This document shows, piece by piece, positions 39,534-63,656 of a DNA stretch of 64,000 bases. The stretch is from Hyaloraphidium curvatum SAG 235-1 (lineage: Eukaryota > Fungi > Monoblepharomycota): positions 372,001-436,000 of the forward strand of contig JAIVFI010000012.1 in NCBI GenBank assembly GCA_025558095.1, written 5' to 3'. The notes below the pieces were generated by a model, which made no database searches, was not told the origin of the DNA, and saw nothing but the letters and a program-made list of their open reading frames with translations. Position numbers and translations under genes: made by a program. How positions within the stretch are numbered: the stretch's first letter is position 1; every line of letters begins with the position of its first letter.

Positions 39534-41575
39534 CTAGAGGATGTTGCACGAGGTCCTCCTGATCCCCCTCCTCCTCTGCCCGCCCGGGCCCCCGTTCCCC
39601 GCCGCCGACCCGGCCTCCTCCTCGTCCTCCCCGCCCAGGATCCCGGAGCTGTAGAAGCTCTTGACCCCCATCCCCCCCTTGCGCTCCAGCATTTTGCACG
39701 CCTCCCGCGACACCCCCCTGCAGTCGTACACCTCGAGCGTCTCGAGCTCCGCCGCGGGCAGCGCGAGGTCGGGCACGCCCTGCTGCTCCGCGCGGCGCGC
39801 GCGCGCGCGCAGGCGGGCGATCTCGTCGAGGAGGGCGTCGGAGATGCGGCCGCAGTTGTCGAGGTCCAGCGCGCGGAGGCGGGGGCAGTGTCGCACGAGG
39901 GCGACCAGCGAGCCGTCGGTGACCTGCAACGGGCGGAGAAGAGCGGGATCAGCGGGTGTGCGGGGTGCGTGCGTGCCGGCCAAACGCACCTCCTCGCAGA
40001 AGCTCAGGCACAGCCTCTCGAGCGTCGCCCGGCACCTCCCCGCCGCCAGACTGCGCACCCCCGCGTCGCCCACCCCCACGCAGTCCTCCAGGTCCAGATT
40101 GCGCAGCGCGTGGCACCCCGCCGCGAGCGCCGCGACCCCGACGTCCGTGAGCAGCCTGCATCCCGCGGCCTCGAGCTGCTCCAGCTCCGGGCACAGCGCG
40201 CCGACGGCCTGCAGCGCGGCGTCGGTGAGGAGGGGGAGGCCGGAGAGGGTGAGGTGGGTGAGGCGGCTGGCTTCGCGGTCGCCCTGGGCTGCGCAGGCCA
40301 CGGCCGAGGCGTCGAGCAGCGCGCGCACGCCGTGCGAGGTGATCCCGGCGCAGCCGCGCACGTCGAGGAGCCGCAGGCGCGGGAGGCGCCGGCCGATGTG
40401 GGCGAGGAGGTGGTCGTCGACCTGGGCGATGCCGGGGATGTGCAGCTGCACGATGCTGGGCGCGTGCTGCACGAGGTACTTGACGCCGTGGCCGGTGATG
40501 TTGCGGCAGTGGCCGATGCAGACGCGGCGCAGGGTCTTGCCGCACTTGATGCCCATCGTCTCGAGGACGTGGTTGGTCGGCGACGGCAGGCCGCGCACGT
40601 CGATCGACGCCAGCTGCACGCAGTTGGACAGCAGGTGGCAGAGCGACGAGCTGCTGATGGTCAGGCAGCCGCGCAGGTCGAGGAACTGCAGGTTGGGGCA
40701 GTTGTCGGCGAGGCTGTGCACGGCCGCGGACGAGAGGTGCAGGCAGCCGCTAATCGGGGGCGGCGAGGGATAACGGAACGCGGGATCGGCAATGATGATC
40801 AGCGCGGACCTGAATGCGGAGGCAACGCAGGGGGAGACAAACCAAAAATTGCCGATGCGGAGGAAGCCACCCGCCGAGGCAATGAGGCCCGTCAGCTGGG
40901 CCGTGTTGATGCGCTTGTAGTGGTTCCTTGCGGTGCAGTCGATCTTGCTCCACAGCGTGCCGTCGAGCGCGATCTTGGCGAACGCCTTGCAGGCCTGGCG
41001 GGGGCGAACCGGGGGGACGGAGTTAGAGGTTGTGGGGTGGGTGACCCGGGTCACGAGTGCCCACCTGCGCGGCGCGCATCAGGTCCGCGAGACGCAGGTG
41101 GCTGAAAATGCGGATGCGCAGCTCCTCCGGCAGCGAGAAGAAGGTGTGCTCGGGGCGGGTGTCCTTGCCGGGGGGCGTGGGGGACAGTCTGGGTGCGGCG
41201 CCCAGCGGGCCCGGCGAGCCGGGGGCGTCAGTGCCGCCGAACAGCGTGTCCTCCGAGGGCGACCGCGCGTGGCGCGAGATCGAGGCAGGCGAGGCGGCGT
41301 ACGCGGTCGACGCCGGGGAGGCCACGGCGAGGTCGTCCTCGTCCGACGACCACGCGGCGCTGGAGCCTGGGCGGGCGGCGGACGGGGCGCCGTGCGGTGC
41401 GACATGGCCCGCGGCGTGGCTGCCTGCCGCCGCGCCGCGCGGGATGTTTATGGCTGCGGGCTGCGCGCGAGTCAGCGGGTGGCGCGGCCGGCGGGGCAAG
41501 CGGGCGCACCTTCACCGGCGTGGCCGGCCGCGCGGGGCGGTGATCGGCGTTCAGCGAGATCGCCGCGTCGGCCAT
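39534..41575 (-). CDS. F-box/leucine-rich-repeat protein (FBXL2/FBXL20-like)
   Basis: F-box FSLPEELRIRIFSHL; CKAFAKIALDGTLWSKID; multiple cysteine-containing LRRs; C-terminal CaaX (CNIL); several introns. Confidence 0.88.
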
Positions 41576-42141
41576 GGCGGAGGCGGGCGGCGGCGCGGGC
41601 CGGGCAGCGGCGGGGAGACGGATGCCGCCGGGCTTCCGGTGGCACGCGGTGCGGCCCAGCCGAGCCCGCGGGCCGGCCCGGGGCGCTGCCGAAAGGGCTG
41701 ATCACCGGCCGCCCTTTTGCGAGGCGGCCGGACGCGTCGGACGCGTGGGGCCGGGGGGCACGCGGTCACGGGATCGAGTCACCGGCGGCCGCCGACACTC
41801 GAAAACCCATCACGCAATCCCGCCACGCCGCATCGGGAGTGTCTCCCTCCAAGGATGCCAGGTCAAACAGAGCTTGCAGGTCTACATGAAGCTTCGACGC
41901 GCCTGGATGGGCTCTGTTGATTCTCGCCGTGATAGAGGTTGCCTCCCTCGCTGGCGGTGCGATCCACCAGGCAACTCAGGCAGCAACGCGTTGCTTCTCG
42001 AGACATCATCCTGTCGATGAAGCATCGAACGCAAGGCCGATCGCGCTCCTTGCCCCCTTCCAGGTCGCACGGACGTCGCGGAAACTCCGACTCTGCTCAG
42101 CCACAAATCGCAAAAAAGCTTGTCGCGAGGAAGATAGGAAG

Positions 42142-45054
42142 ATGGAGGTCGTACTGGCCTCGCCGGGCGACGTCCCTGCAGCGCAGCGGCATGCGTTCGA
42201 CGCGTACCTCGAGTCGATGGCGAGCGGCGCGTGGGCGGCGACGATGGCGCTCGCGTGCCCCGCGTTCGCCGACCCGCGCGCCGGGCTGGCCGCGGCGCTC
42301 GCGCTGCCCGACGCCGAGGTGCTCGCGGCCGCGGCAAAGCACGGCGACATCGGCCAGCGGAACCGCGCCGCGCTCGACGCGCTGGCAAAGAGCGAGCAGG
42401 CAAAGGTCGCGCGCGAGGGCCCGACCGTCGACGCGCTGATCGCGGAGGGCGCCGCGTACCGCGTCAAGTTCGGCGTCAAGTTCCTCGTGTCGGCGCAGGG
42501 CAAGACCGCAGAGGAGCTGCTGGCCATCCTGCGCTCGCGGGCGGGCAATTCGCGCGAGGAGGAGTGGCGGAACGCCCGCGTCGCGCTGTGGGAGATCGCA
42601 GCCAAGCGGCTGCAGCTGCCCGGCGGGCCCCTGGCGTACCCCGAGGGCTTCGCGGCCCCGTGGGAGCTCCCCGAGAAGCACGGCGTCGAGGCCCTGTCGG
42701 CCGCGGTCTCGCTCCCCGGCGGCGGCGCGCAGCGCATCGCGGGCGCCTGGACGTCCAAGCCGCTGAGCCCCGAGGCCGAGGCCCTGCTCGCCGGCGGGCC
42801 CGTGCTCTTTGAGATCGCGTCGCTGAGCAAGACGCTCGCCGTGGCCATGGCCCTGGATTACTTCCGCGCCAAGGGCATCCCGTCCGACACGCCCGCCAAC
42901 GAGCTCTTTGCGCAGACGGGCTCCAAGTTCCGCATCGTCAAGTCGCCCGAAGCCGCCGGCACCGACTGGAGCGCGGACGAGGTCACGCTCGCCCACCTGA
43001 CGGCGCACTGCGCCCTCAACATGCACTACGTCAACGGCGTGCCCGCGGACCGGCCCATGCCTCCGATCGAGGCCTTTCTGTACGGCAACGACGAGTACGG
43101 CTACGAGCCCGTGTCGGCCATCAACAGGCCCGGCACGACCTTCAAGTACTCGGGCGGCGGCTTCCTCGCCCTCGAGCACCTCCTCGAGGCGCACTCGGGC
43201 CAGAAGGCCGCCGACATGGGCGACGCCTTCCTGGCCTCACTGGGGCTGCGGGACACCACCTTCCGCCAGGAATCCCTGCCCGGGCGCACCTACGCCCTCG
43301 GTCGGCGCGACGACGGGACCGTGGTGCACGGCGGCAGGCTCATGTTCCCCTCGTTCGCGGCCGGCATGATGAGCACCCCCGCCGACGTCATCGCCTTCCT
43401 CGCCAAGCTCGCCGAAGCCTACAAGGAGGTCGACCCGGCCAAGGCGGGCAACCCGATCTCGCACGACGCGGCGCGGTGGATGCTCCACGGGACCGACATC
43501 GGCAGCCGCCGCTTCATGGGCTGCCTCATGGGCCTCGGCGTGTTCGTCGCCGAGGCCGGGCCCAACAAGTTTGCCGTGCACCAGGGCGCCAACGACGGCT
43601 TCCGCGCCGTGTTCCTCTACTGCTTCGAGGGGCCCGACGCCGGGTTCGGGGTGGTCGCGTGCGCCAACGCGGACCAGCGCGCCGTGGGGCTGATTTCGGA
43701 GCTGCTCCAGGGCCTGCTGGTCAAGTGCGGCGTGCGCGGGGTGGACCGCGCGGCGTTCAGGTCGAGCTTCAGCGCCGACGGGGTGCGGCAGGAGGAGATC
43801 GTCAACACGGGCTACCGCGAGCTCGTCTTCCGCGCCTTCGAGCCCGCCAAGCCCGAGCCGATCGCCCGGCCGTCCGGGGCCGCGGAGCACCCTGCCCGCG
43901 CGGCGGACGTGCTACGCGGGTGCGAGGGGATGTACTGCTCCAACGATCGCTTCGGGCGGTGGGAGAACCTCGTCTGCGGGTTCGAGCCGGCCTTCGACCC
44001 CGCTCTGTTTGGGGCGCAGGGCAAGGTGATGGACAGCTGGGAGACTGTGCGGCACAACCCGCACCCGTGCGACGCGCTCACGCTGCGCCTGCGGGAGCCG
44101 TCCAGGTTGCGGTACGTCGAGGTGTCGACGCGGTTCCACCTGGGGAACCAGGCGCCCGAGATCAGGATCCTGGGGTTCGCCGACGCCGCGTTCGCGGAGG
44201 CGCAGGGCACGCTGCCGTCGGTCGCGTGCTCCCTGGGCATGCCCGAGGGCGCGATCGAGGTTCTGCCCAGGTTCCCGCTCGAGGGGCACAGCCTCGTGCG
44301 CATCGATCTCGGCGCCGAGGCCGCCGAGCGCAATGGCCCGCTGGCGGCGCTGACGATCCAGAACATCCCCGACGGGGGCATCACGCGCGTCGCCCTGTTC
44401 GCGCCCGACTTTGATCCGTCGGCGCTGGCGGCGGACGGACATCCGTTCGAGCCCGTGGCCGGCGCGCGGTGCAGGCGCCACGCGGAAGCCATCCCCAAGA
44501 CGCAGAAGCCCCTCGCCGCACCGCCGTCGGTTTCGCCCGAGGAAGCTGCCCGCAACAGGCTTGCCGCGCGCTCCGCCGGGCCGCCGTGGAACGCCGCCGA
44601 CGCGCTGCTCGGCGCTGCAGTGATCGCAGCAACTGACGAGCACTACAGCCCGGCTGCGCTGATCATCTCCCCCGGTCCGCCGCTCGACATGTTCGACGGG
44701 CTGGAGTCGGCGCGCAGCCGCCGCGCGGGGAGCTCGGAATCGGCGACGGTGCGGCTCGCCTGGCCGTGCGAGATCGAGGCGGTCGACGTCGACTTTACAT
44801 ACTTCCGCAACAACAACCCCAAGGAGCTGGGTATCGAGTACCTTTCTGAGGTCGGGAACGGGAACGGCGAGCCGGCCTGGAAGACGCTCGTCCCGTGCAC
44901 GCCCGTGAAGCCATTTGCCGGATCCGTCAAGAGGTTCGCCTTCGGCGCAGATCGGCGCGCGGCACTGGGGCCTGCTGCCGTGCTCCGCATATCGGCGTAC
45001 CCGTGCGGCGGGTTCAACAGGGTCCGCGTGTGGACGCACACCCCGCTGCCGTAG
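42142..45054 (+). CDS. Triple fusion: OHCU decarboxylase / beta-lactamase-like serine hydrolase / allantoicase (970 aa, intronless)
   Basis: OHCU decarboxylase: HGDIG..SEQ..YRVKFGVKFLVSAQG..EIAAKRL (~42142-42620). Serine hydrolase: FEIASLSK (SxxK, 42820), FKYSGGG (43147), HQGANDGF (43579). Two allantoicase repeats: CSNDRFG, GKVMDSWETVRH, FHLGNQ, PDGGITRV; TDEHYS, MFDGLESARSR, YFRNNNP, YPCGGFNRVRV. Confidence 0.88.
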   Translation: MEVVLASPGDVPAAQRHAFDAYLESMASGAWAATMALACPAFADPRAGLAAALALPDAEVLAAAAKHGDIGQRNRAALDALAKSEQAKVAREGPTVDALIAEGAAYRVKFGVKFLVSAQGKTAEELLAILRSRAGNSREEEWRNARVALWEIAAKRLQLPGGPLAYPEGFAAPWELPEKHGVEALSAAVSLPGGGAQRIAGAWTSKPLSPEAEALLAGGPVLFEIASLSKTLAVAMALDYFRAKGIPSDTPANELFAQTGSKFRIVKSPEAAGTDWSADEVTLAHLTAHCALNMHYVNGVPADRPMPPIEAFLYGNDEYGYEPVSAINRPGTTFKYSGGGFLALEHLLEAHSGQKAADMGDAFLASLGLRDTTFRQESLPGRTYALGRRDDGTVVHGGRLMFPSFAAGMMSTPADVIAFLAKLAEAYKEVDPAKAGNPISHDAARWMLHGTDIGSRRFMGCLMGLGVFVAEAGPNKFAVHQGANDGFRAVFLYCFEGPDAGFGVVACANADQRAVGLISELLQGLLVKCGVRGVDRAAFRSSFSADGVRQEEIVNTGYRELVFRAFEPAKPEPIARPSGAAEHPARAADVLRGCEGMYCSNDRFGRWENLVCGFEPAFDPALFGAQGKVMDSWETVRHNPHPCDALTLRLREPSRLRYVEVSTRFHLGNQAPEIRILGFADAAFAEAQGTLPSVACSLGMPEGAIEVLPRFPLEGHSLVRIDLGAEAAERNGPLAALTIQNIPDGGITRVALFAPDFDPSALAADGHPFEPVAGARCRRHAEAIPKTQKPLAAPPSVSPEEAARNRLAARSAGPPWNAADALLGAAVIAATDEHYSPAALIISPGPPLDMFDGLESARSRRAGSSESATVRLAWPCEIEAVDVDFTYFRNNNPKELGIEYLSEVGNGNGEPAWKTLVPCTPVKPFAGSVKRFAFGADRRAALGPAAVLRISAYPCGGFNRVRVWTHTPLP

Positions 45055-45734
45055 GGGGATCGGAAGTAATGACTGGTGGGATGGGTTGGATGGATGGATC
45101 AACCTCCCGGAAAAACGGTGAAACCCGGGATCGGGCTGATGATGATGATGGTGGACGGGGGATCGCCGGAAGAAAAACCGGATTCGGAGCAACTAGACAG
45201 ATGCAATCGATCGAATCATGCAGGCATGCCGAACATCCGCGCACAGCGTCTATCTGGAGAACGTGCGGTGCCCTTGCCGAAGTGGCGCGCTCGCTGGCGT
45301 TGCGCTTTTCACGTGGGCGAGCACACCAGGAAGGTAGCGTGCGCCCAGAGAACCTGGCTTTCGACAATCAGTCTTGACTCTGCATCAGTAATATCCGCCC
45401 AGAGTTCTTCATCCGATTCGCATGTGACCGACGGATTGTCAAGCTCTCGATCTCAAGGTCCCCCCGGACCCCGCGCAACGGCCACCTGCCCCACGCCACA
45501 CCGGCCATGCGTCCTGGGCCCGGGAATTAAACAGCGAGAGCGTTCCATAGAGGCCATCCGCGTCTTGTGGCCACGACACCCGCCGAACAGGGCATCGGGG
45601 CGGTCGGGTTCGGGCGGTCGGACTCCGTTCGTTATCTGGCCAGTCAGCGGGCCGATATCCAACATTCCGGTTTCTCTCGCACCTCTGCTACTCCCCTACC
45701 GCGCCTCGTGGAACCCCATCCGCACGAGTCGGCA

Positions 45735-48346
45735 ATGTCCGAGACCAACGGCGTCAACGGCGCCACGAACGGCACGGCGCCGGTCGTTTCCGACGTGAGT
45801 GTGGCCGTTTCAGGCCCTGGCCCTTCAGGCACCCCGGTGCAGACGCCCCGCGGGACGGAATCTGACGGGCGGCGCCTCATTCAGGCCGCCGTGAGCGAGA
45901 AGACCGCCACCGAGTTGGCGGACGTGCCCCTGAACGGCAAGGCCGCCACCACCGATCTCTCCACGATGGAGGCCGCTGCCCCCGTGGCCGAGCCCCCGAA
46001 GGGCGGAATGGCGGGCTTCTTCCACAAGTCGAACGAGGCCGGTGGGTTTCTTGACGTGCTCCGATGCTGCGGCGCGCTCATCGCTGCGCTGCCAGTCGCC
46101 AAGAGCTTCGTTGGCAAGTTCTTCAAGGTAATCAACAACCCCCGGGAATCCCCCGCCCCGATGCTGACGCGGCCCTCTAGCTCGATGAGCGCAAGACCAC
46201 CTTCTGGACCGAGCTTCGTGCCGGGCTCACGACCTTCGTCACGATGAGGTGCGCTTTCCGTTGACGCGAGTCCCCCCGCTTATCTCACACCCCGCGCACC
46301 GACAGCTACATCATCGCCGTCAACGCCGCCATCGTGTCGGACACAGGCGGCCCCTGCGAGTGCCCTGCCGACCTGTTCCCTTGCTTCCCCGGCAAGGACG
46401 TCGCCTACGATCAATGCGTGTTCGAGCTTCGCAAGAGTTTGATCACGGCCACGACGGCCGGCTCGCTCATCGGTTGCTTCCTCATGGGAGCCTTTGCCAA
46501 CCTGCCTATCGCTCTCGCCCCCGGCATGGGTCTCAACGCCTACTGTGAGCTGGTCCCTGCGCAGATCGCCCGCCAGGATGCTGACAACTTCGAAAGTCGC
46601 CTACACCGTTGTCGGCTTCCGCGGCACCGGATCGGTTCCTTTCGAGGTTGCGCTTGCCGCCGTCTTCATCGAAGGCGTCATCTTCGCCATTCTCTCGATC
46701 CTCGGTCTCCGCCAGGCCCTCGCTAGGTTCCTGCCCCAGACCCTGAAGCTCGCCATGGGTGTCGGCATCGGCTTTTTCCTCGCCCATATCGGCGGTCAGA
46801 CGTCGGAGGGCATCGGCCTCATCACCTACAACCAGGCGACCCTCGTGACCCTCGGCGGTTGCCCGCTGGACGACCGCAACGAGCGCAACGAGTGTCTCGC
46901 GAACGTGATGCGTGGCCCGACCACCTGGGGTGGGTGGCCTGCAAGTTGTCGTTCTGTGCTTCGAATCTAACGTCGATCGCGCTCCCCGATAGTCGGCATT
47001 ATGGGGTTCTTCTTGATCGCCATCCTCATGCTGTACCGCGTCCGCGGTGGCATCTTCATGATCGTCTTGTTCGTCTCGATCATCTCGTGGCGTGAGTGTC
47101 TGTGCCGTGCCTTGGTCAGACTTTCTTTTGATCCGATCGGTCCCCTCTCCGCGCTCCCCCTCCCACCTGCGAATCGCGCACAGCCCGTGGCACTCTCATC
47201 ACCTACTTCCCTTACACCCCGCTTGGCGACGCCAAGTTCGACTGTACGTGTCCTGTTTGTCACCTGCTGTTGCGCCAGTACTCACTCGTTTCGCGTTCAG
47301 ACTTTAAGCAGGTCGTTGCGGTCCCCAACGCTTCCATGACAGCAGGCAAGCTCAACTTTGACCTGTCGGGCGGCGCCGTCTGGCTTGCGCTCATCACCTT
47401 CCTTTGTGCGTCTTCGGGAGTCTTGCAGTACACCACGAATCTAATGCCTCGCTTCGGCAGACGTCGACATTTTCGACGCCACCGGTACCCTGTACTCCAT
47501 GGCCAACTTCGGCGGCTTCACCGACAAGTACGGCGACTTCCCGGGTGCCGAGTTTGCTTTCCTCGCCGATGCCGTCGCCATCTCGATCGGTGCCGTGCTC
47601 GGCACGTCCCCCGTCACCGCCTTCATCGAGTCGGCGGCCGGCATCGCCGAAGGAGGCCGTACCGGTCTCACGGCCATCACGGTGTCGTTCTTCTTCTTCA
47701 TCGCCCTGTTCTTCGCCCCCATTTTTGCCTCGATCCCGCCGTGGGCCACGGGTCCGGCCCTCATCGTCGTCGGTTGCCTGATGGCCCAGGGTGTCTCGAA
47801 GATCAACTGGTGAGCACGGGAAACAGCGTCAGACAATCGGCAGCTGAAGCTCACTGCTTTACACTTTCCAGGCGCTACTACGGCGATGCCATCCCCGCGT
47901 TCGCTACCATTGCTCTGATGCCCCTCACCTACGTGAGTGAAGGATTTGGGCGGATGTAGCTGCTTCTAACGAGTGCTCTGGCTGGCAGTCGATCGGCTAC
48001 GGCATCATCGGCGGCATCTTCGTCTACCTCGTCCTGAACGGCGGCGTCTGGCTCCTTGCCAAGGTGTCGGGCGGCAAGATCGTGCCGCCGGACCACGACA
48101 AGAGGGAGAAGTACAACGCCTACAACGAGCTCCCGATCCTCCCCAAGTGGATTCGGTCCCTCTACTCCAAGGCGACGAAGAAGCCTATGTGGGAGGACAC
48201 GCCCAAAGGGCAGGAAGTACGTTCGGAAGCAGCAGGGACGAAGTGTCGGATCCTCACGCCACGCGATCTCGCAGGTCCTTGCCCGTTACGATGCCATCCC
48301 GCGCTCCGTCCTGGAGGCCGAGATCGAGGAGGCAAAGCACTTCTAA
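45735..48346 (+). CDS. azgA: AzgA-type purine (adenine/guanine/hypoxanthine) permease
   Basis: [95 protein letters not shown]; about 10 introns. Confidence 0.92.
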
Positions 48347-50693: not shown

Positions 50694-51209
50694 ATGAAAC
50701 TGCAGGCGGAGCCTCTCAACGCGGATTCCTTCGCGCCCTTCGGCAGCGTCGTCGATGCCGCGGCGCTCAAAGGCTGGCCCGTGAACCAGGGCCGGGCGCG
50801 CCGCGCCAACATCCCCAGCCCTTTCGAGGCGCCGGACGGAGCCATCGCGCCGCGCCTAGCGATCTACGAGGTCCAGGGGACCCCGTCGCCGATCGAGATC
50901 CCCGTGCTGGAGCGGCACCCCTTATCGCCCCAGATGTTCGTGCCCCACGGGACTGGGCGATACCTCGTCGTGGTGGCCCCGACGGACGACGAGGACAAGC
51001 CGGACGTCGCACACGCACGCGCGTTTGTGGGGAAGGACGGGCTCGCGGTGGTGTACAGCAAAGGAACCTGGCACGCACCCATGTTCGCGCTGGACCAAAG
51101 ACTGGACTTTATGATGGCCATGTCGGAGGCTGGGGACCAGCGAGACACGGAGGAAGTATCGCTGGCGGTGCCGCTGGAGGTCATTGCTCCTGATGTGTCG
51201 CACCGATGA
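50694..51209 (+). CDS. Ureidoglycolate lyase (AllA/DAL3 family), intronless
   Basis: AEPLNADSFAPFG, VNQGRA, LERHPLSPQMFVP, YLVVVAP, YSKGTWHAP. Confidence 0.92.
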   Translation: MKLQAEPLNADSFAPFGSVVDAAALKGWPVNQGRARRANIPSPFEAPDGAIAPRLAIYEVQGTPSPIEIPVLERHPLSPQMFVPHGTGRYLVVVAPTDDEDKPDVAHARAFVGKDGLAVVYSKGTWHAPMFALDQRLDFMMAMSEAGDQRDTEEVSLAVPLEVIAPDVSHR

Positions 51210-51499
51210 TCGGATGCAGGGGACGGAAGCTGTACCGGAGAGTACGTTGCATTTGCAGAACTCGCCGCTTCGAATACTCTTCCGCGGAGTGTATTGCATA
51301 GTCGATGCTTCAGCGTACAGATTACAGTCTTCCATGGTGGCCAAGATGTCGAAGCCTTGCATGATGCATGCCGTGTTGCTCAGGTCCCAAGCCCAGCAGT
51401 TCCAAACGCAGTCCTCCCGAACCAGATCTATGCAGATCTATGCAATCCGAGGCCCATCCACGCGTCTCCGGGCCGAACGCGGCAGGGAAAGCGGCCGAA

Positions 51500-53350
51500 T
51501 CAGGAGCTTTGTGCGCCCGAGACCATCCGGCCGCGCACGTACACCTGGCGGATGGCGCTGATGTCGCCGAGGTAGACCCACTTCTCGATGATCGAGGCCA
51601 TGGTGTCGTGCGGGAAGATGTCCACCGGGTTCTCCGGGTTCTCCAGGTCGATCACGAGCGCATCGAACTCCTTCCCGACCTCGAAGTTGCCCACGACGTT
51701 CTCGAGCCCGAGCACCTTGGCGCCCCCGACGGTGGCAAAGTAGAGCACCTGCGCGAGGTTGAGCGCCGGCTGGCGGTGGCGGTGCTCCGTCGGCGTCGTG
51801 CTGAGCGACGGCATGCTGAGGATCTTGCCCGCCGTCATGGCGTCGCGCACCGTGTTCTGCAGCGAGGGGCTGTACCCGCCCGAGACGTCCGTGCCGAGGC
51901 CGATCTTGTCCGTGAAGCCCTCGCGCTTGCCGGGGGGCGGCGTGCACATGTAGTGCCGCACGTTGCAGATGCCGGAGCCGAGGGCAAAGTTGGAGGTCGG
52001 GCAGTGCGAGAGGCCGACGTCGCGGCGCACCATCATCTCCCGCTCGTCGTCCGAGAGGTAGATCCCGTGCGCCATGATCGACGTGGGGCCCAGCAGACCG
52101 TACTTGTCGTACACCTCGACGTAGTTGTGCTCGTGCGGGTGCAGCTTGTGCACCCAACCGACCTCGGCGGGGTTCTCGCACGTGTGCGACTGGATCGGCA
52201 CGGAAAACTCCTTGGCGATCTGGCCGAGGCCCGAGAGCAGCTCGTCCGTGCATGTGGGCACGAACCGCGGCGTCACGACGGGGCGGATGAGGCCGACCTT
52301 GTGCGGGTCGTCGGCGACGCCCTCCGAGGTCACGTGCAGGACGTGCTGCACAAAGTCGCGGGTATCGCTCAGCGACGACCCAGTGTCCTCGACGTAGTAG
52401 TCGGGCCCATTGCGGTCCATGCAGACCTTGCCCACGAGGCCGCGCTGGCCCTGCCGGAGCATCTCGTCGGCCAGGACCTTGGAGCCCTCGAGGTGGATGG
52501 TCGCGTAGTAGCTGGCGGCGGTGGTCCCGCACCGCAGGGTCTTGGCGACCGCTTTGCGGTACGCCATCCGCGCGTACTCGACGTCCTTGAACGCCGCCTC
52601 CCGCGGGAAGGTGTAGGTGTTGAGCCACTCGAGGAGCGGCAGGTCGAGGCCGGTGCCGGCAAAGACGTACTGCGAGGCGTGGATGTGCGTGTCGATGAAG
52701 CCGGGGAAGATGAAGGTCGAGGGGGTGGTCGTGGCCGTGACCTGTGCGGCGCGCAGCGATGCGACGGAGGAGGAGAGGGGAGGTCAGGGTCGCACGAGGA
52801 GTGCGCAGCAGTTCGCACGCACCTTCTGGATCTGCAGGTCGACCCCTTGCATGTGCGGCACGGCCTCTTGGATCTCCTTTGCGAGGATGTCTGCGGGCGG
52901 GAGCACGAAGCCGCCAGCGGCCTCGACGGCCATGCGCACGCAGCCCAGCTCGGGGGTCACGAAGCGGATGACTCCGGCGGGGTCGACGCCGAGCGCGGCG
53001 GCGGGGCCCAGCATCTCGATCACGGGCAGGAAGACCTGCGAGTCCTTCGGCAGCCGACAGTGCACTATGTTGCCCACGAACAGGTGGATCCCCGTTCCGT
53101 CGGAAGTTGAACTGGCCGCCCCGCGAAGCACAAAGGTGCGGACCCCGGAGGCGCGGGCGGGTGCGGCGGCGGCGGAGTACGGCGGCGGCGACTCGACATC
53201 CGCCCGCGCGACGACGACCTCGAGCAGCGGGGCGGGCTTGTCGTCGGTGGGGCGGGACGCGTCGCACCGGCGGGCCCTCAGCAGCCGCGCGAGGAACAGC
53301 AGCGCCGCGACGGCCACGGCCGCGAGCTGCGCGAGCAGAACAAAGTCCAT
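51500..53350 (-). CDS. Guanine deaminase with N-terminal hydrophobic extension
   Basis: PGFIDTHIHASQY, LLEWLNTYTFP, GTTAASYYATIH, TPRFVPTCT, IQSHTCEN, MAHG, HCPTSN, GLGTDVSGG, GNFEVGKEFDA; intron near 52744-52822. Confidence 0.93.
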
Positions 53351-53652
53351 CGTCGCGGAGGGCGGGCGCGGCGCTGGGAAGTGGCGGGGAAGCGAGTCGA
53401 GATAACGGTCCGGCCCCCGCGCTGGTCCCGGTCCCGGTCCCGACCCTGATCAGATGATTCACACCCGACCGAGATCGAGATCGGACCACTATCCATTGCT
53501 CATCGCCCATCTGGATTGCGATTTTTGTCATCAGGAGGCATCTGCCTTTCATTCGCGCCCCTTCGATCGGCCCTCCGCGCGTTTGCGTGGCACTCGCAGC
53601 CCCCCGGGACCACCGACTCGTCTCCAAATCGGGAGAAGTTCGCCTGCACGAC

Positions 53653-55155
53653 ATGGCGCCGCAGCAGCCGCGGTTCGCCATCGTGGGGGGCGGTCTCGGC
53701 GGCCTGGTGCTCGCGCTGGCCATCAAGAAGCACCTGGGCGTCACGCCGACGGTGTACGAGCAGGCGCCGAGCTTCGGTGGGCACCGCGCGATTCGCGCCC
53801 CGGACGCGCCCTGAGCCGCTCTCGCCCCGCAGATGCCGGCGTCGGAGGCGCCATCGGCATGTACGCCAACGGGCTGCGCGTCATCCGCGACATCTCGCCC
53901 GAACTGCTCGACCGCATCCGCGCAGACAGCAGGCCGTACGTGCACCGCAGGTGGATGCGCCACGACGGCTCAGAGGTCGCCGTGGGCGAGGAGCGCTACC
54001 TGGCGGAGTGGCCCACGCGCCGCGACGAGCTCGAGCTCGCGTCCATCGGCATCAGGCGGTGGCGCCTCCAGCAGGCCCTCTACGACGCCTGCCTGGCCGC
54101 GGACATCCCCGTCAAGCTCGGAGTTCGCGCCGAGCTGGACGGGCAGGATGCGGAAACGGGCGTGGTGCGCCTCAAGGTCGACGGGAAGACCGTCGAGGCC
54201 GATCTCGTGTTTGGGTGCGACGGCGTCCGGTCGGCGATCCGTGCGGCCCTGTTCCCCGCGTCGGAGCCCGACTACACGGGGGTGACGTGCCTCATGGGTG
54301 CGGCACCCTTCCGGCGTGAGAAGGACGGCATCTGCTTCCCGTCCTCGGCAACGACTCGGTGGGGGAGCACCTTATCTCCTGCGCCGCGCGTCACGCTAAT
54401 TCCTCATGCTGCTGGCTCGGCAGCAATCATGCTTGCTACTACAACACAGGGGACAACGAGCAGGTTTTCCAGATCTACTTCAGCACCCCCGAGCGGCCGG
54501 AGACGTGGCGGGCGCTCAGCAAGGAGGAGGGCAAGAAGGAGTGCGAGGCGCTCGCTGCGCAGCTCAAGTGGGCCCCCCTCTTGTCCGACGCCTGCGAAGC
54601 TAATCCTCACCGTGCCCCAGAGCCGACGGCTGGGACAAGCAGTTCGTCGACCCGCTCCTCCAGGCCGAATCCGTCCTCCGCGTCGGCCTGCGCTCCCGCA
54701 AGCCGATCCCCGTCTGGCACGACCGCCGCGTGATCCTCCTCGGCGACGCGGCCCACCCGCCCGTGCCGTACATCGGCCAGGGCGCCATGATGGCGATCGA
54801 GGACGCCGGCGTGCTGGTGTTCTGCCTGCGCGCGCTGTGCCAGCCCGCCTCGGGCGGTGCCTTCTCGTTCGCGCAGCTGGAGGACGCGGTGCGGCTGTAC
54901 GAGAAGCTGCGGTACCCGCGCACGGCCGAGACGCTCGCGAGGAGCGAGTCGCTGGGGAAAATGCAGGTGCAACGCGCCTCGGATCCCGACAGGGCCGAGG
55001 TGGAGAAGCGCGAGCGGGCACTGGCGGAGGAGGTGGCGGAGCTGGGGACGCTCAGGGTGATGAAGGCCGGGCCCGGCTACGACTACCGCGCGGAGGTCGC
55101 TAATGCGCTGGCGGAACACGTGCGCGGACGGGTGCTCGCGGAGGCACATCTCTGA
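53653..55155 (+). CDS. Group A FAD-dependent monooxygenase, candidate HpxO-like urate hydroxylase
   Basis: IVGGGLGGL (GxGxxG), [15 protein letters not shown] (DG motif), [24 protein letters not shown] (GD motif); three introns; ends in -AHL (PTS1-like). Substrate inferred from context only. Confidence 0.85.
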
Positions 55156-58069: not shown

Positions 58070-61000
58070 ATGGAGGGGACGCAGTTTTCCAGCGTGCTCC
58101 GGTTCTACTTGAACGGCCAACGCGTGGTTCTGGACGGCGACTCTGTCGACCCGGACACGACGCTTCTCACCTATCTTCGCGGAATCGGCCTGACGGGGAC
58201 GAAGCTGGGATGCGGGGAAGGCGGCTGCGGGGCATGCACGGGTAGGATTGACCGATGACTCGTCCTAGTCGCGGCAAATGCTCACGAGACGGCGTCGGAT
58301 CAGTCGTGCTGCAAAGCCGGAACCCCGCGACGGGAAAGATAGAGTGGGTACCTACCTCGCTCGATCTTCGACGCAACTAACGCTCATTGATTCAGGCACC
58401 GCGCAATCAATGCCTGCCTGGCTCCCCTCGTGTCCGGTACGACGAAGTTCGGTCTCTTCGCTATCTCGTCCTCATCGACCCCTGTTTCCTTCAGTTGACG
58501 GCCGACATGTCATCACCATTGAAGGTAATTGCCGCTGGCCAACGATCCAAGCGAACTCGCGTGCTGAACGGTCCGCCAGCCCTGGGCAACTCCGAGAACC
58601 CTCACCCGCTCCAGGAGCGCATGTGGAAGCTCTCGGGCTCACAGTGCGGCTTCTGCACCCCCGGTATCGTGATGAACGTTTACGCCCTTCTCCGTGAGGC
58701 CGCCTACCGCGGGGCGCTCACCGTCGAGGACATAGAGCTGGAGGGCGCGCTGGACGGCAACCTGTGCCGCTGGTGGGTCGAGCGACGTATCCGGCACCGC
58801 GTCGAATTAATTCCCTCTTTTCAGCACCGGCTACGCTCCCATCTTCGCAGCCGTGAAGAGCTTCGTGGGATCTTACTTGTCCAAGGTCTCGCCGACGGCA
58901 AACGGCGACAGTGGGCGGGACGCCGAAGTCGAACTGCCGTTCAACTACGAAGCTGCGGGTCTGCTGTCCGAAAAGCCGGCAGCCGCTCAGTGTTGCACCC
59001 ACGACCAGCCAGTCAACGGAGCCCATGAATCTGCCCCGGCTGCCGGGAAAGGCTGTGGCCGATCGGACTGCTGTCAGCTCAATGGCGGGTTAAACGGCAC
59101 GGCGGAAAGCGCGGCACCCAAGCGCGCGTTTCCTCTCTTCGAGTTCAAGCCTTATCGACCTGGCACCGAGTTGATCTTCCCGCCTGCTTTGATGACGCAC
59201 AAGCTGGAGCCGCTCAAATTCGGTTCCAAATCTCGCCTATGGTACCGGCCGACGACTTTGGACCAGCTATTGGCCCTCAAGAAGGCTTTTCCGGACGCCA
59301 AGCTGGTTGGCGGCAGCTCGGAGATTGCCATCGAGGTCGGCATCTTGGGCCGAAAGTACCCGACGTGCATCTTCGTCGGCGATGTTCCGGAACTCCAGAG
59401 CGTGTCACCTGTGGTGTCCGGCTCGGACTCTCCGAACCTCACGTTCGGGGCGAATCTTCCCCTTTCCGACCTCGAGGAGCTTTGCAAGACGCTGTCGAAG
59501 GAGCTGCCTTCTAACCAGTCTGGGCCGGTGAAAGCCATTCGCGATCAGCTTCGGTAGGAGGCTGTGTGCTAGCCGATTGCTCTTCCTGACCACGGTCATG
59601 CAGGTACTTTGCGGGGCGCCAAGTGCGCAACGCCGCTTCCGTGGGCGGCAACATCGCTACGGCGTCGCCGATCTCGGACTTGAACCCGGTCTGGATCGCC
59701 ACCGGAGCCAAAGTGGTCGCAGCCAGTGCGGCGCAGGGCGAGTTTGAGCTCCCGGTCGATACCTTCTTCGTTGGCTACCGCAAGACCCAGCTGCCTTCGG
59801 ATGCGGTCATCGTCCGCGTTGTCGTACCGCTCAATGGCTCCCCGGAGCGTGAATACGTGCGAGCTTTCAAGCAGGCCAAGCGCAAAGATGACGATATCTC
59901 CATTGTGTGTTCCTGCATGTTCTTGAGGCTCGGTTCCGACAACGCGATTACGGCGGTTCGACTGGCTTTCGGCGGCATGGCGGCGATCACGGTGCAGGCC
60001 CCAAAGACGGAGGCGTTCCTGCTCGGTGAGATCGATGCGATGTCGTCCAAAGCTCGTGCTGACCGCCAGAAAAGGCAAACCGCTGACGTCCGAAACGGTC
60101 GAGGGCGCCATTGACGTTCTCAGCGGCGAGTTTGATCTGCCCCACGACGTTCCTGGAGGTGAGCAAACCGTTTCGATTGTCACGGCGGGTCTTGATTCCT
60201 CGGGCACAGGCATGGCATCGTATCGCCGCACTTTGGCGATGTCTTTCCTCTTCAGATTCTTTGCCTCTGCTGCAGAACAGTTCGGCATTCAGTTCGGATC
60301 CATGGGTGCCAATGTCGACGGCGATCTCACGGATTCGATCCACCGCAACATCAGCTCTTCGAGCCGCGATAACTCGGACCCGTATGCTCTTGCGACGTTG
60401 GGCCAGCAAATTCCTCACAGCTCGGGCTTAAAGCACGTCACCGGAGAGGGTAGGTTGCGTCGGCGTAGCAGGTTCACACTCCCCACCTAATGCTTCCGCA
60501 CAGCTGTCTACGTCGACGACATGCCGACGGTCGGCAACGAGGCATACTTGGCACTTGTTTTGTCGGACCGCGCTCACGCGAAGATTGTTTCGGTCGACCC
60601 CTCAGCTGCACTCGCGGAGGACGGCGTCATTTCTTACGTTGATCACCGGGACCTTGCTAGCCCAAAGGCAAACATCTGGGGGCCATCCGCCACGGCCATG
60701 GACGAGACCTTCTTCGCAGTCGACGAGGTCATCGCCCACGGGCAGATCATTGGCGCAATCGTCGCCAAGACGAAGATCATTGCCGTCAAAGCTGCGAGGC
60801 TGGTGAAGGTCCAGTACGAGGACTTGCCGTATATCTTGACGATCGAGGAGGTTCGGCAGTGTTGTCGGCGCGTGGCGTTCGCCAGTCTAAACGCAGATTA
60901 CTTCCGCCAGGCGATCGAGGCTCGGTCTTTCTTCCCCCAGTATGATCGCCGCATCGCGCGAGGCGACGAGATCGAGGAAGCCCTCGCGCGGTGCGACCAC

Positions 61001-63071
61001 GTCGTGGAGGGCTCGACACGTACAGGTGGCCAAGAGCACTTCTATCTGGAGACGAACGCGTGCCTCGTGGTACCTAAGCTGGAAGGCGGAGAGATGGAGG
61101 TCTTTTCCTCGACCCAGGCCCTGAATGACACACAAAAGTGGGTCGCACAGGTCACTGGCGTTCCGCGAAATCGCATCGTTGCGCGCGGGAAGCGTTTGGG
61201 AGGCGGCTTTGGCGGCAAAGAAAGCAGGACTGCAATGCTGGCGGCTGTCTGCGCTGTTGCGGCCAAGAAGCTGCGGCGACCGATCAGGTCAATGATGGAC
61301 CGCGACGTCGACATCCGGACCACGGGGCAGCGGCATCCTGTTCTTGCGGAGTGGAAGGTCGGGTTCACGAAAGAAGGGAAGCTGCAGGCGCTGCAGTGCA
61401 CGTGAGTCTCTGCACTTTAGCCAGTACTTCTCTGTGATGTGACGCAAAACCCTGCCAGAACCTACGTGAATGGTGGTTACTCAATTGACCTCTCCATCGG
61501 TGTCTGCGATCGGGCCCTCGCCCATCTGGACAACACGTACTACATCCCGCACTTTGACGCGCGAGGCAAGATATGCCGAACAAACACCGTCAGCAACACT
61601 GCATTCCGCGGGTTCGGCGGACCGCAGGGGATGTTCATCGCCGAGTCTTACATCGAGAAGATTGCGCACACGCTCAAGATGGACGTCGACCGCGTGCGCG
61701 AGATAAACCTGTATACCGAAGGACAGCGCACGCCGTTCCACCAGCAGGTGCTCGACTGGCATATCCCGCGCATGATCAAGGAATGCGCTGCCGAAAGCGA
61801 CTACGTGCGCCGCAAAGCCGAGGTGGCCGCGTTCAACAAGACGCACCGTTGGCGAAAGCGGGGGATCTGTCTTGTGCCGACCAAGTTCGGCCTTGCATTC
61901 GGCATCAAGTTTCTGAACCAGGCCGGTGCTCTCGTGCACATCTATACGGACGGATCGGTGCTCGTCGCTCACGGAGGAACAGAGAGTGAGGCTCCGGGAT
62001 CTTGGCTTCGCCGATCGGCGGCTGATCCTTCCTTCTGCCGCTGTTGTCAGTGGGTCAAGGACTGTACACCAAGTGCACCCAGATTGCCGCGCAAGAGCTC
62101 GGAGTGCCGCACGACTCGGTGTTTACCTCCGAATCTTCTACCAACACCGTTCCGAACACCGTTCCGACGGCTGCTTCGGCAGGCAGCGATTTGAATGGCT
62201 ATGCGGTGAGCATTGGTCCGTCGTGGTGTCGCGCTCGTCCTAATGTGGTTTTAGGTTTACAATGCGTGCAAAGAGTTGAATGAGCGCCTCAAGCCTTATC
62301 GTGAGAAGCTCGGACCGGACGCATCAATGGCTGCCCTCGCCTCTGCGGCTTTCATGGACCGCGTCAACCTGTCGGCGACCGGATTCTGGGGCCCGCCCGA
62401 GCTCGGATACGTCTGGCGCAGCTACGACGAAGGCGGGGGACGCGACGACGAGGGCAAGGTTGGTCCCCTGTTCATGTACTTCACTCAGGGCGTGGCGGCC
62501 AGTGAAGTCGAGGTGGACATCCTTACTGGAGACCACACGGTGCTCCGAACGGACATCAAGATGGATGTTGGAAAGAGCCTGAACCCAGCCATCGATTACG
62601 GGCAAATCGAAGGGGCGTTCGTGCAAGGGATGGGGTGGTCGACGATCGAAGAGTCTCTGTGGCTCAAGAACGGAGCCATCTTCACTGCCGGACCTGGAAC
62701 CTACAAGATCCCCGGTTTCGCGGACACGCCGCAACAGTTCCACGTGCGTTTGCTCAAGGGAGTCGAATGGCCGAACCTCAAGTCCATTCGCTCATCGAAA
62801 GGCATCGGAGTGGGTGCGGCCGCCGTACGAGCTGCGTTTCCCCGACTGACGTTGGCGATAGGAACCTCCGCTGTTCCTGGGGTGCTCCGTCGCGATCGCC
62901 ATCCGCGACGCCCTTCGATCGGCGCGCGCCGATGCCGGGATCGACGACGTCCAGGACTTCCGCCTTCCGCTCACTTCTGAGCGGATTCGGCTCGCGGCGG
63001 GCGACTTTTTGGCGCAGAAGGGCAAGGTGGAGGCGAAGGAGGGCCAGAAGGGTTGGTTCGTTCCGTTTTGA
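58070..63071 (+). CDS. hxA: Xanthine dehydrogenase
   Basis: [93 protein letters not shown] after splicing; more than 10 introns. Confidence 0.97.
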
Positions 63072-63257: not shown

Positions 63258-63656
63258 ATGGCGTCTCGCGCCAAGCTGAGCACTCATGTTCTTGACACGA
63301 CCCATGGCATTCCGGCTGCGAACATGCGGGTAGATTTGTACTCCGTGTCGACCTCGCAGGACGGATCGCGTTCCCTGAACCACGTCAAGACTGTGCGGAC
63401 AAACTCGGACGGTCGCAACGACGGAGGCCCGCTCCTGTCCGCGGAGGAGCTGCGCGTTGGCGAATTCGAGCTGCATTTCCACGTGGCGGAGTACTTTAGC
63501 GCTTATCGCGCGGCGCACGGGGAACCGGCACCCTCCGCTGGGGTCTCGTTCCTGAACATCGTACCTATCGCTTTCGGAATCCCGGACGCTTCGCAAGGGT
63601 ATCACGTGCCATTGCTGTGTTCGGAATGGTCCTACTCGACCTACCGCGGAAGCTAG
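63258..63656 (+). CDS. uraH: 5-hydroxyisourate hydrolase (transthyretin-like), intronless
   Basis: [26 protein letters not shown], terminal YSTYRGS signature. Confidence 0.96.

What the first reader, a model, noticed from the sequence alone, without database searches (positions are those of the whole stretch)
42142..45054. Three-domain OHCU decarboxylase - serine hydrolase - allantoicase fusion, intronless
Seen: a single 970-aa, very GC-rich, intronless ORF among intron-rich neighbours, with the OHCU decarboxylase His (HGDIG) and Glu (SEQ) motifs and two allantoicase repeats retained. Inference: a trifunctional enzyme taking OHCU to ureidoglycolate, possibly with channelling, and possibly acquired horizontally.
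Basis: partly seen in the sequence, partly recalled or inferred. Interest (0 to 1): 0.8.

Follow-up and report, generated by a model that had tools for sequence, protein, structure and literature searches.

The report
Fused purine-breakdown enzyme, candidate new allantoinase
One gene encodes a three-part enzyme for breaking down uric-acid products, and comparison of 66 bacterial genomes suggests that its middle part, which resembles a beta-lactamase, is a previously unrecognised kind of allantoinase.

Summary
The 970-aa ORF at 42142-45054(+) is real. Pfam finds OHCU decarboxylase, a beta-lactamase/PBP-fold serine hydrolase and two allantoicase repeats, with the catalytic residues of the first two domains invariant across 37 relatives. 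One RNA contig spans the whole ORF and both UTRs. It shows no canonical intron, only an in-frame 180-nt non-canonical skip that is probably an artefact.

The architecture is common but uncharacterised. It occurs in at least 172 bacterial species, mostly Bdellovibrionota, usually with an extra N-terminal malate-synthase-like domain, and in some eukaryotes.

The gene is the genome's only OHCU decarboxylase and only allantoicase. It lies in a purine-catabolism cluster that lacks only an allantoinase.

In one bacterial phylum, 20 of 21 genomes with a stand-alone allantoicase have an AllB allantoinase beside it. None of 45 fusion carriers has AllB or PuuE. So the serine hydrolase most likely is the allantoinase, by inference and without an assay.

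The main caveat is that this genome also has a PuuE-like gene elsewhere. Horizontal acquisition is not supported, and channelling is untested. Another first-reader note of this scan (s1-712138) proposed the same allantoinase idea for this same stretch.

The parts
41996..42141 (+). 5' UTR, minimum extent
   Evidence: The RNA contig (record 3, 3164 nt) starts at 41996. A low-depth contig over 41800-42002 may extend it.
42142..45054 (+). Coding sequence of the 970-aa three-domain protein, stop codon included
42190..42615 (+). OHCU decarboxylase domain, residues 17-158, with His67, Glu85 and Arg156
   Evidence: PF09349 scores 70.1 bits. It aligns to Klebsiella HpxQ, 3O7H/5UOU. The three residues are invariant in 37 relatives.
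42649..43851 (+). Beta-lactamase/PBP-fold serine hydrolase domain, residues about 170-570, with Ser227-x-x-Lys230, Tyr336-Ser-Gly and His480-Gln-Gly; the candidate allantoinase
   Evidence: PF00144 scores 66.7 bits. Motifs are invariant. The domain model has pLDDT 90.7 and pTM 0.91.
42618..42797 (+). 180-nt stretch absent from the RNA contig (residues 160-219). No canonical splice sites; GCCCG occurs at both junctions.
   Evidence: It encodes a helix and two strands of the hydrolase fold. It is conserved in P0002. The junction repeats pair in the predicted RNA fold.
43927..44400 (+). Allantoicase repeat 1, residues 596-753
   Evidence: PF03561 and the own-genome hit at C12:415924-416400.
44596..45036 (+). 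Allantoicase repeat 2, residues 819-965
   Evidence: TIGR02961 best stretch at 819-965, own-genome hit at C12:416611-417039, and yeast allantoicase 1SG3 at 2.7e-19.
45055..45333 (+). 3' UTR
   Evidence: The RNA contig ends at 45333.
45387..47243 (+). Cluster context: multi-intron gene covered by a high-depth RNA contig, with a Xan_ur_permease-type exon. The 3' end was not mapped.
   Evidence: At least 7 GT..AG introns. Exon 46596-46928 matches PF00860 at 27.2 bits.
50694..51209 (+). Cluster context: AllA-type ureidoglycolate lyase
   Evidence: PF04115 scores 132.5 bits.
53454..55103 (+). Cluster context: FAD-dependent monooxygenase, a possible urate hydroxylase. Its identity and exact gene model are not settled.
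   Evidence: PF01494 scores 24.9 bits and HpxO only 27.7 bits. No uricase (PF01014) was found in the genome.
60521..61405 (+). Cluster context: one exon-sized piece of a xanthine dehydrogenase gene
   Evidence: PF02738 scores 181 bits and PF01315 scores 91.5 bits.
63258..63656 (+). Cluster context: HIU hydrolase of the transthyretin family
   Evidence: PF00576 scores 108 bits, and TIGR02962 scores 108 bits against a cut-off of 87.45.

Best explanation
The gene encodes one polypeptide that carries out three consecutive steps of urate catabolism. The N-terminal domain decarboxylates OHCU to (S)-allantoin. The central serine hydrolase, of the beta-lactamase/PBP fold, opens the hydantoin ring of allantoin to give allantoate, presumably through an acyl-enzyme on Ser227. 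That would make it an allantoinase unrelated to the two known kinds. The C-terminal double allantoicase repeat then cleaves allantoate to ureidoglycolate and urea. Separate cluster genes supply the flanking steps: xanthine dehydrogenase, a probable FAD urate hydroxylase, HIU hydrolase and ureidoglycolate lyase. What is shown: the architecture, the conservation, the single transcript and the genomic distribution. What is inferred: all three enzyme activities, and above all the allantoinase activity.
For: Architecture and catalytic residues. One RNA contig covers the ORF and both UTRs. The gene is the only OHCU decarboxylase and the only allantoicase in the genome. The window also holds ureidoglycolate lyase, HIU hydrolase, xanthine dehydrogenase and a purine-type permease, but no allantoinase. 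In bacteria the four-domain form sits with a PuuD-type urate oxidase, HIU hydrolase and XdhABC. Of 45 carriers, none has PuuE or an AllB above cut-off, and three of the strongest AllB-like hits that I scanned proved to be dihydroorotases. In the same phylum, 20 of 21 genomes with a stand-alone allantoicase have AllB directly beside it, and the 21st has it split across contig ends. Fisher's exact p is 5e-16. HIU hydrolase is present separately in 24 of 24 carriers. AllA-type lyase is rare in both groups, so only the allantoinase gap tracks the hydrolase domain. The domain sits between the two flanking activities, in pathway order. Its nearest solved folds include amidases and esterases.
Against: There is no biochemical evidence. 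The window's own genome has a PuuE-like gene on another contig (343 bits, next family 42 bits), so this organism has no strict pathway gap. The Fisher test ignores relatedness; the two bacterial groups may be only a few lineages. The bacterial carriers also lack a recognised ureidoglycolate lyase, so the hydrolase could in principle serve that step. Stand-alone homologues in protists gave no pathway context. The only RNA contig lacks 180 nt that encode part of the hydrolase fold.
Confidence: 0.65

Rival explanations
1. The serine hydrolase domain acts on ureidoglycolate, as a lyase or amidohydrolase, rather than on allantoin. An unidentified enzyme would then supply the allantoinase.
For: None of the 24 carriers tested has an AllA-type ureidoglycolate lyase. 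The bacterial proteins also carry a glyoxylate-related malate-synthase-like domain.
Against: AllA is also missing from 20 of 21 relatives that have AllB plus a stand-alone allantoicase, so its absence does not track the hydrolase domain. The window's cluster encodes its own AllA-type lyase. The malate-synthase-like domain is a better candidate for that step, because the zebrafish MS-like protein is a ureidoglycolate lyase (PMC10120013). Ureidoglycolate lyase chemistry is not acyl transfer.
Confidence: 0.08
2. The hydrolase domain has another role, such as an unrelated esterase or amidase, a scaffold, or a regulatory module. In this organism PuuE would be the working allantoinase.
For: A PuuE-like gene is present in this genome. 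The domain is only distantly related to any characterised enzyme, at 15-20% identity. Stand-alone homologues lack purine-pathway context.
Against: The active-site motifs are invariant, and the domain is the best-conserved part of the protein at about 50% identity. The 45 bacterial carriers have no other known allantoinase, yet the same protein makes allantoin and consumes allantoate.
Confidence: 0.17
3. The 180-nt skip is real RNA processing or a real allele. The expressed protein would then lack residues 160-219, have a crippled hydrolase domain, and act only as a decarboxylase plus allantoicase.
For: The only transcript contig carries the skip, and no contig covers the skipped stretch. The skip is in frame.
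Against: None of the six possible cut positions gives GT-AG or GC-AG ends, and the junction shows GCCCG microhomology. The stretch encodes a confidently modelled helix and two strands. It is conserved in P0002. The repeats pair at the base of a predicted stem, which is typical of reverse-transcriptase jumping. The tool warns that contigs drop variants and that holes prove nothing.
Confidence: 0.1
4. The gene reached this eukaryote by recent horizontal transfer from a Bdellovibrionota-like bacterium, with loss of the malate-synthase-like domain.
For: Most known carriers are bacteria. In the free tree the window's clade sits inside the bacterial radiation, with support of 82-92. The gene is intronless.
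Against: GC3 is 0.935, against 0.941 for the F-box/LRR neighbour. Other neighbours are intronless too. Fused forms nest within stand-alone protist forms. A tree holding all eukaryotic fused forms together is 3.1 log-likelihood units better, with p-AU 0.55. The outgroup branch is long, so the root is unsure.
Confidence: 0.2

Closest known systems
AllB / DAL1 allantoinase (metal-dependent amidohydrolase superfamily, TIGR03178)
   Same: It catalyses the reaction proposed here. In related bacteria it occupies the equivalent position, directly beside the allantoicase gene.
   Different: It has an unrelated fold and mechanism: a TIM-barrel metalloenzyme rather than a serine acyl-enzyme hydrolase. 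Neither the window's genome nor the 45 carriers has a hit above cut-off.
PuuE allantoinase (polysaccharide-deacetylase-like, metal-independent, TIGR03212)
   Same: It is the precedent for a non-homologous allantoinase. From my own knowledge, it was found by the same pathway-gap reasoning (Ramazzina et al. 2008).
   Different: It has a different fold. It is absent from the carriers, but a PuuE-like gene exists elsewhere in this genome.
Allantoin synthase (HIU hydrolase fused to OHCU decarboxylase) of plants, diatoms and bacteria
   Same: It is a natural fusion of consecutive urate-catabolism steps that includes OHCU decarboxylase (PMC13751858).
   Different: Its partner domains differ. Here HIU hydrolase is a separate gene, and the fusion extends downstream to allantoicase.
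PBP/class C beta-lactamase fold hydrolases: R61 DD-peptidase, D-amino-acid amidase, IS11 esterase, LACTB, ClbP
   Same: They share the fold and the SxxK / Tyr / HxG active-site motifs.
   Different: Identity is only 15-20% and TM-scores are 0.55-0.65. A single-sequence PDB search finds nothing. The class C beta-lactamase model scores 14 bits against a cut-off of 415. Scores fall sharply outside the subfamily, from 156 bits or more to 67 bits or less.
Zebrafish malate-synthase-like ureidoglycolate lyase (PMC10120013)
   Same: It may explain the fourth, N-terminal domain of the 1550-aa relatives. Arg276 is replaced there too.
   Different: The window's protein lacks this domain. In the relatives Trp365 and Asp447 are retained, so whether the domain is a lyase or a synthase is unresolved.

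Membership tests
OHCU decarboxylase (PF09349) | Profile match above Pfam's curated cut-off | tested here: met
   70.1 bits against a cut-off of 24.
OHCU decarboxylase (PF09349) | Catalytic His, Glu and Arg (His67/Glu87/Arg161 in zebrafish numbering, from my own knowledge) | tested here: met
   His67, Glu85 and Arg156 align to Klebsiella HpxQ and are invariant in 37 relatives.
OHCU decarboxylase (NCBIfam TIGR03180/TIGR03164 equivalogs) | Score above the equivalog cut-off | tested here: not met
   69.4 bits against 139.4, and 25.1 bits against 96.25. It is a divergent branch of the family.
Allantoicase (PF03561) | Two allantoicase repeats above the cut-off | tested here: met
   133.3 bits in two stretches. 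Yeast allantoicase 1SG3 matches at 2.7e-19.
Allantoicase (NCBIfam TIGR02961 equivalog) | Score above the equivalog cut-off | tested here: not met
   129 bits against 277.9. Stand-alone allantoicases of related bacteria score 140-190 bits per repeat on Pfam, against 60-100 for the fused forms.
Serine beta-lactamase / PBP fold (PF00144) | Profile match, the SxxK, Tyr and HxG motifs, and the fold | tested here: met
   66.7 bits. SLSK, YSG and HQG are invariant. The model matches PBP-fold structures at Foldseek probability 1.00.
Class C beta-lactamase proper (NF033085) | Score above the equivalog cut-off | tested here: not met
   14.2 bits against 415.
Allantoinase, as a functional class (EC 3.5.2.5) | Hydrolysis of (S)-allantoin to allantoate | not testable with these tools
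   Inferred from the complementary distribution with AllB and PuuE and from the domain's position.
Known allantoinase families (AllB TIGR03178, PuuE TIGR03212) | Homology to either family | tested here: not met
   The NCBIfam scan of the protein lists neither family. The domain has an unrelated fold.

The most novel reading that the evidence does not exclude
The beta-lactamase-fold domain is a third, independently evolved class of allantoinase that uses a serine nucleophile. It is widespread in predatory Bdellovibrionota and in several protist and fungal lineages, both fused and stand-alone. In its four-domain form it is joined to a malate-synthase-like ureidoglycolate lyase, making one polypeptide that takes OHCU all the way to glyoxylate and two molecules of urea.
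Probability: 0.55. Interest if true: 0.8.

Novelty: new variant of a known kind. Interest (0 to 1): 0.72.

Why it matters
Only two unrelated kinds of allantoinase are known. A third kind, built on the penicillin-binding fold, would fill a pathway gap in at least 45 bacterial genomes, and probably in 172 or more species. It would correct database names such as 'serine hydrolase' or 'malate synthase, glyoxysomal'. It would extend the known chemistry of the beta-lactamase fold to hydantoin-ring opening, and give a compact multi-step enzyme for studying how unstable ureide intermediates are handled. The prediction is directly testable with one recombinant protein and one point mutant.

Tried and rejected
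- A single-sequence PDB search with the hydrolase domain found nothing. The family profile gave only weak hits.
- Genomic context of three stand-alone protist homologues showed ordinary eukaryotic neighbours and no pathway signal.
- The ESM Atlas feature search returned only generic beta-lactamase clusters.
- The apparent three-domain bacterial form P0015 starts at base 12 of its contig and is probably truncated. P0002 is complete.
- I looked for a malate-synthase part in the window as a missed exon. tblastn found none, and the RNA contig starts 146 nt upstream of the ATG.
- I tried to decide whether the fourth domain of relatives is a synthase or a lyase from residues aligned to 3CUZ. The result was mixed.
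- The context of Persicimonas MS-like protein was uninformative.
- Five literature searches for a beta-lactamase-fold allantoinase or for this fusion found no description.
- Model coordinates are not exposed, so I could not measure the active-site pocket or the distances between sites.
- I did not build, translate or fold the joined 180-nt-deleted isoform.
Full report
**Observation.** The + strand holds an open frame from 41917 to 45054. Its first ATG is at 42142, which gives 970 aa. Pfam finds OHCU_decarbox (residues 17-158, 70 bits), Beta-lactamase (222-513, 67 bits) and Allantoicase in two stretches (133 bits), all above the curated cut-offs. NCBIfam agrees on the families, but every score is below its equivalog cut-off, so all three parts are divergent members. 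The decarboxylase aligns to Klebsiella HpxQ with His67 (HGDIG), Glu85 (SEQ) and Arg156 in place. The hydrolase carries Ser227-Leu-Ser-Lys230, Tyr336-Ser-Gly and His480-Gln-Gly at the spacing expected for the penicillin-binding/class C fold. All seven residues are invariant in 37 full-length relatives.

**Transcript.** The one public run that holds the gene is RNA-derived, because its contig over the downstream gene skips at least seven GT..AG introns. A single 3164-nt contig covers 41996-45333, which is the whole ORF plus 146 nt upstream and 279 nt downstream, so the three domains are transcribed together. The contig has no canonical intron. It does skip 42618-42797, which is 180 nt and in frame. 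The ends read GC..GG, and GCCCG is shared by both sides, so none of the six possible cut positions is GT-AG or GC-AG.

The skipped residues (160-219) include a helix and two strands that are modelled with confidence in both structure predictions. They are conserved in the closest relative, P0002. In the predicted RNA fold the two junction repeats pair at the base of a stem that encloses the skipped part, although the fold is no more stable than shuffled sequence. I read the skip as a reverse-transcription or assembly artefact, or a minor defective isoform. I did not build or fold the joined form.

**Family.** The architecture is common. More than 120 full-length relatives were listed. Most are about 1550 aa, in the order malate-synthase-like, OHCU decarboxylase, serine hydrolase, allantoicase. 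In reference genomes, 172 bacterial species carry the hydrolase subfamily. They are mostly Bacteriovoracaceae, Oligoflexia and Bdellovibrio, plus some MAGs labelled Planctomycetota. The thraustochytrid Hondaea has the four-domain form, annotated 'malate synthase, glyoxysomal'.

The window's protein lacks the fourth domain. No such sequence lies in the window, and the transcript begins just upstream of the ATG. A second complete three-domain form, P0002 (961 aa, 51% identical), exists in a freshwater metagenome. Stand-alone versions of the hydrolase, 400-450 aa long, occur in marine protists including Aureococcus. The hydrolase is the best-conserved part of the protein, at about 50% identity. 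Scores fall sharply outside the subfamily, from 156 bits or more to 67 bits or less.

**Context in this genome.** The gene is the genome's only allantoicase and only OHCU decarboxylase, and the hydrolase subfamily is single-copy. The same window holds:
- an AllA-type ureidoglycolate lyase (50694-51209),
- an HIU hydrolase (63258-63656),
- pieces of xanthine dehydrogenase (about 60.5 kb),
- an FAD monooxygenase (53454-55103), with only a weak match to urate hydroxylase HpxO,
- a MatE-type transporter,
- a multi-intron gene with a Xan_ur_permease-type exon, covered by a high-depth RNA contig.

No cofactor-free uricase and no AllB-type allantoinase were found in the genome. So this is a eukaryotic purine-catabolism cluster in which the one step without a recognised gene is allantoinase. 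The caveat is an intronless ORF on another contig (C19) that matches PuuE at 343 bits. That is below the bacterial cut-off of 424.6, but the next-best family scores only 42 bits.

**What the hydrolase does.** In 58 bacterial loci the fusion gene is accompanied by HIU hydrolase (50 of 58), a PuuD-type membrane urate oxidase (47 of 58) and XdhA/B/C. Across 45 carrier genomes:
- HIU hydrolase is separate in 24 of the 24 tested.
- PuuE is absent from all 45.
- No AllB hit reaches the curated cut-off.
- Three of the strongest AllB-like hits that I scanned are dihydroorotases.

These genomes therefore make allantoin and consume allantoate on one polypeptide, yet have no known allantoinase.

The contrast group comes from the same phylum (201 genomes). 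Twenty-one genomes have a stand-alone allantoicase. Twenty of them have AllB at 521-573 bits directly beside it, and the 21st has it split across contig ends. Fisher's exact test gives p = 5e-16, uncorrected for relatedness. The AllA-type lyase is rare in both groups (0 of 24 and 1 of 21), and the stand-alone group has no close MS-like homologue. So the lyase gap is general in this phylum, and only the allantoinase gap tracks the hydrolase domain. AllB lies beside the allantoicase gene, whereas the hydrolase domain lies immediately N-terminal to the allantoicase domain and in pathway order.

The chemistry also fits. Allantoinase converts a ring carbonyl into a carboxylate, which is what an acyl-enzyme serine hydrolase does. 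I conclude, by inference, that the domain is an allantoinase of a new kind.

**The fourth domain of relatives.** PMC10120013 shows that zebrafish malate-synthase-like protein is a ureidoglycolate lyase without synthase activity, and reports that group only in eukaryotes. In the bacterial four-domain proteins Arg276 (E. coli MSA numbering) is replaced by Trp, while the Mg ligands, Trp365 and Asp447 are kept. A stand-alone member in Desulfogranum lies next to an M20 peptidase and a 256-aa cupin, which look like allantoate amidohydrolase and ureidoglycine aminohydrolase. A role at the ureidoglycolate or glyoxylate step is therefore likely, but whether the domain is a lyase or a synthase is open. 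It fits that the window's protein, which lacks this domain, has an AllA-type lyase in its cluster.

**Structure.** The hydrolase domain model (pLDDT 90.7, pTM 0.91) is closest to IS11 esterase, LACTB, D-amino-acid amidase, SurE, ClbP and R61 DD-peptidase, at TM 0.55-0.65 and 15-20% identity. The full-length model has pLDDT 90.4 and pTM 0.90. That points to a fixed, compact arrangement of the three domains.

**Origin.** In a tree of the hydrolase domain rooted with distant homologues, all fused forms make one clade (100*) nested among stand-alone protist forms. Hondaea and P0084 branch first. The window's protein groups with P0002 and a EukProt transcript (99*) inside the bacterial radiation, at moderate support. 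Constraining all eukaryotic fused forms to one clade gives a slightly better likelihood, with p-AU 0.55. GC3 of the gene (0.935) equals that of the F-box/LRR neighbour (0.941). Transfer between eukaryotes and Bdellovibrionota has clearly happened at some point, but neither its direction nor a recent transfer into this genome is supported.

**Literature and earlier notes.** An October 2026 review of urate catabolic enzymes mentions two allantoinase kinds and several fusions but no beta-lactamase-fold enzyme. Five searches found no description of this fusion or of such an allantoinase. The library lacks most subscription journals.

**Verdict.** The gene is a real, expressed member of a widespread but uncharacterised family. 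The most likely mechanism is a three-step OHCU-to-ureidoglycolate enzyme whose middle domain is a new class of allantoinase (confidence 0.65). Channelling and horizontal transfer remain open.

Noticed in passing
window 42142-63656: A eukaryotic purine-catabolism gene cluster. It holds the fusion gene, a permease-like gene, a MatE transporter, ureidoglycolate lyase, an FAD monooxygenase, xanthine dehydrogenase and HIU hydrolase. The genome has no cofactor-free uricase (PF01014).
   Followed up: partly
G000:C19:137640-138560 (L014:1375-2493): An intronless ORF of 372 aa whose best match is PuuE allantoinase (343 bits, below the cut-off of 424.6; next family 42 bits). It is a second candidate allantoinase, and it lies outside the cluster.
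   Followed up: partly
P0014:1-700 and relatives; L112:10001-12070: A bacterial malate-synthase-like family of about 690 aa. It is either fused to the purine enzymes or stand-alone beside M20-peptidase and cupin genes in Desulfogranum. Arg276 is replaced by Trp. It may be a bacterial counterpart of the eukaryotic MS-like ureidoglycolate lyase, a group that PMC10120013 reports only in eukaryotes.
   Followed up: partly
Genomes G025-G220 (phylum of G002): Bdellovibrionota with an allantoicase fall into two groups: an adjacent AllB-allantoicase gene pair (21 genomes) or the four-domain fusion (26 genomes). Most of both groups lack an AllA-type ureidoglycolate lyase.
   Followed up: yes
window 41460-41778: An RNA contig with a CT..AC joint (41461-41509), which is a minus-strand intron. 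It appears to belong to the divergently transcribed F-box/LRR gene (ORF 39534-41054, minus strand). That would leave roughly 41779-41995 as a shared promoter region.
   Followed up: no
window 51368-53110 and 53454-55103: These long ORFs have odd GC by codon position (GC1 0.91 in one; GC2 0.67 with GC3 0.64 in the other). The listed frames may therefore not be the true gene models.
   Followed up: no
L106, L108, L110: Stand-alone homologues of the hydrolase lie on contigs that look picoeukaryotic, among kinases, ion channels, an eEF1A-like gene and an SMC gene. The subfamily is therefore widespread in marine protists.
   Followed up: partly
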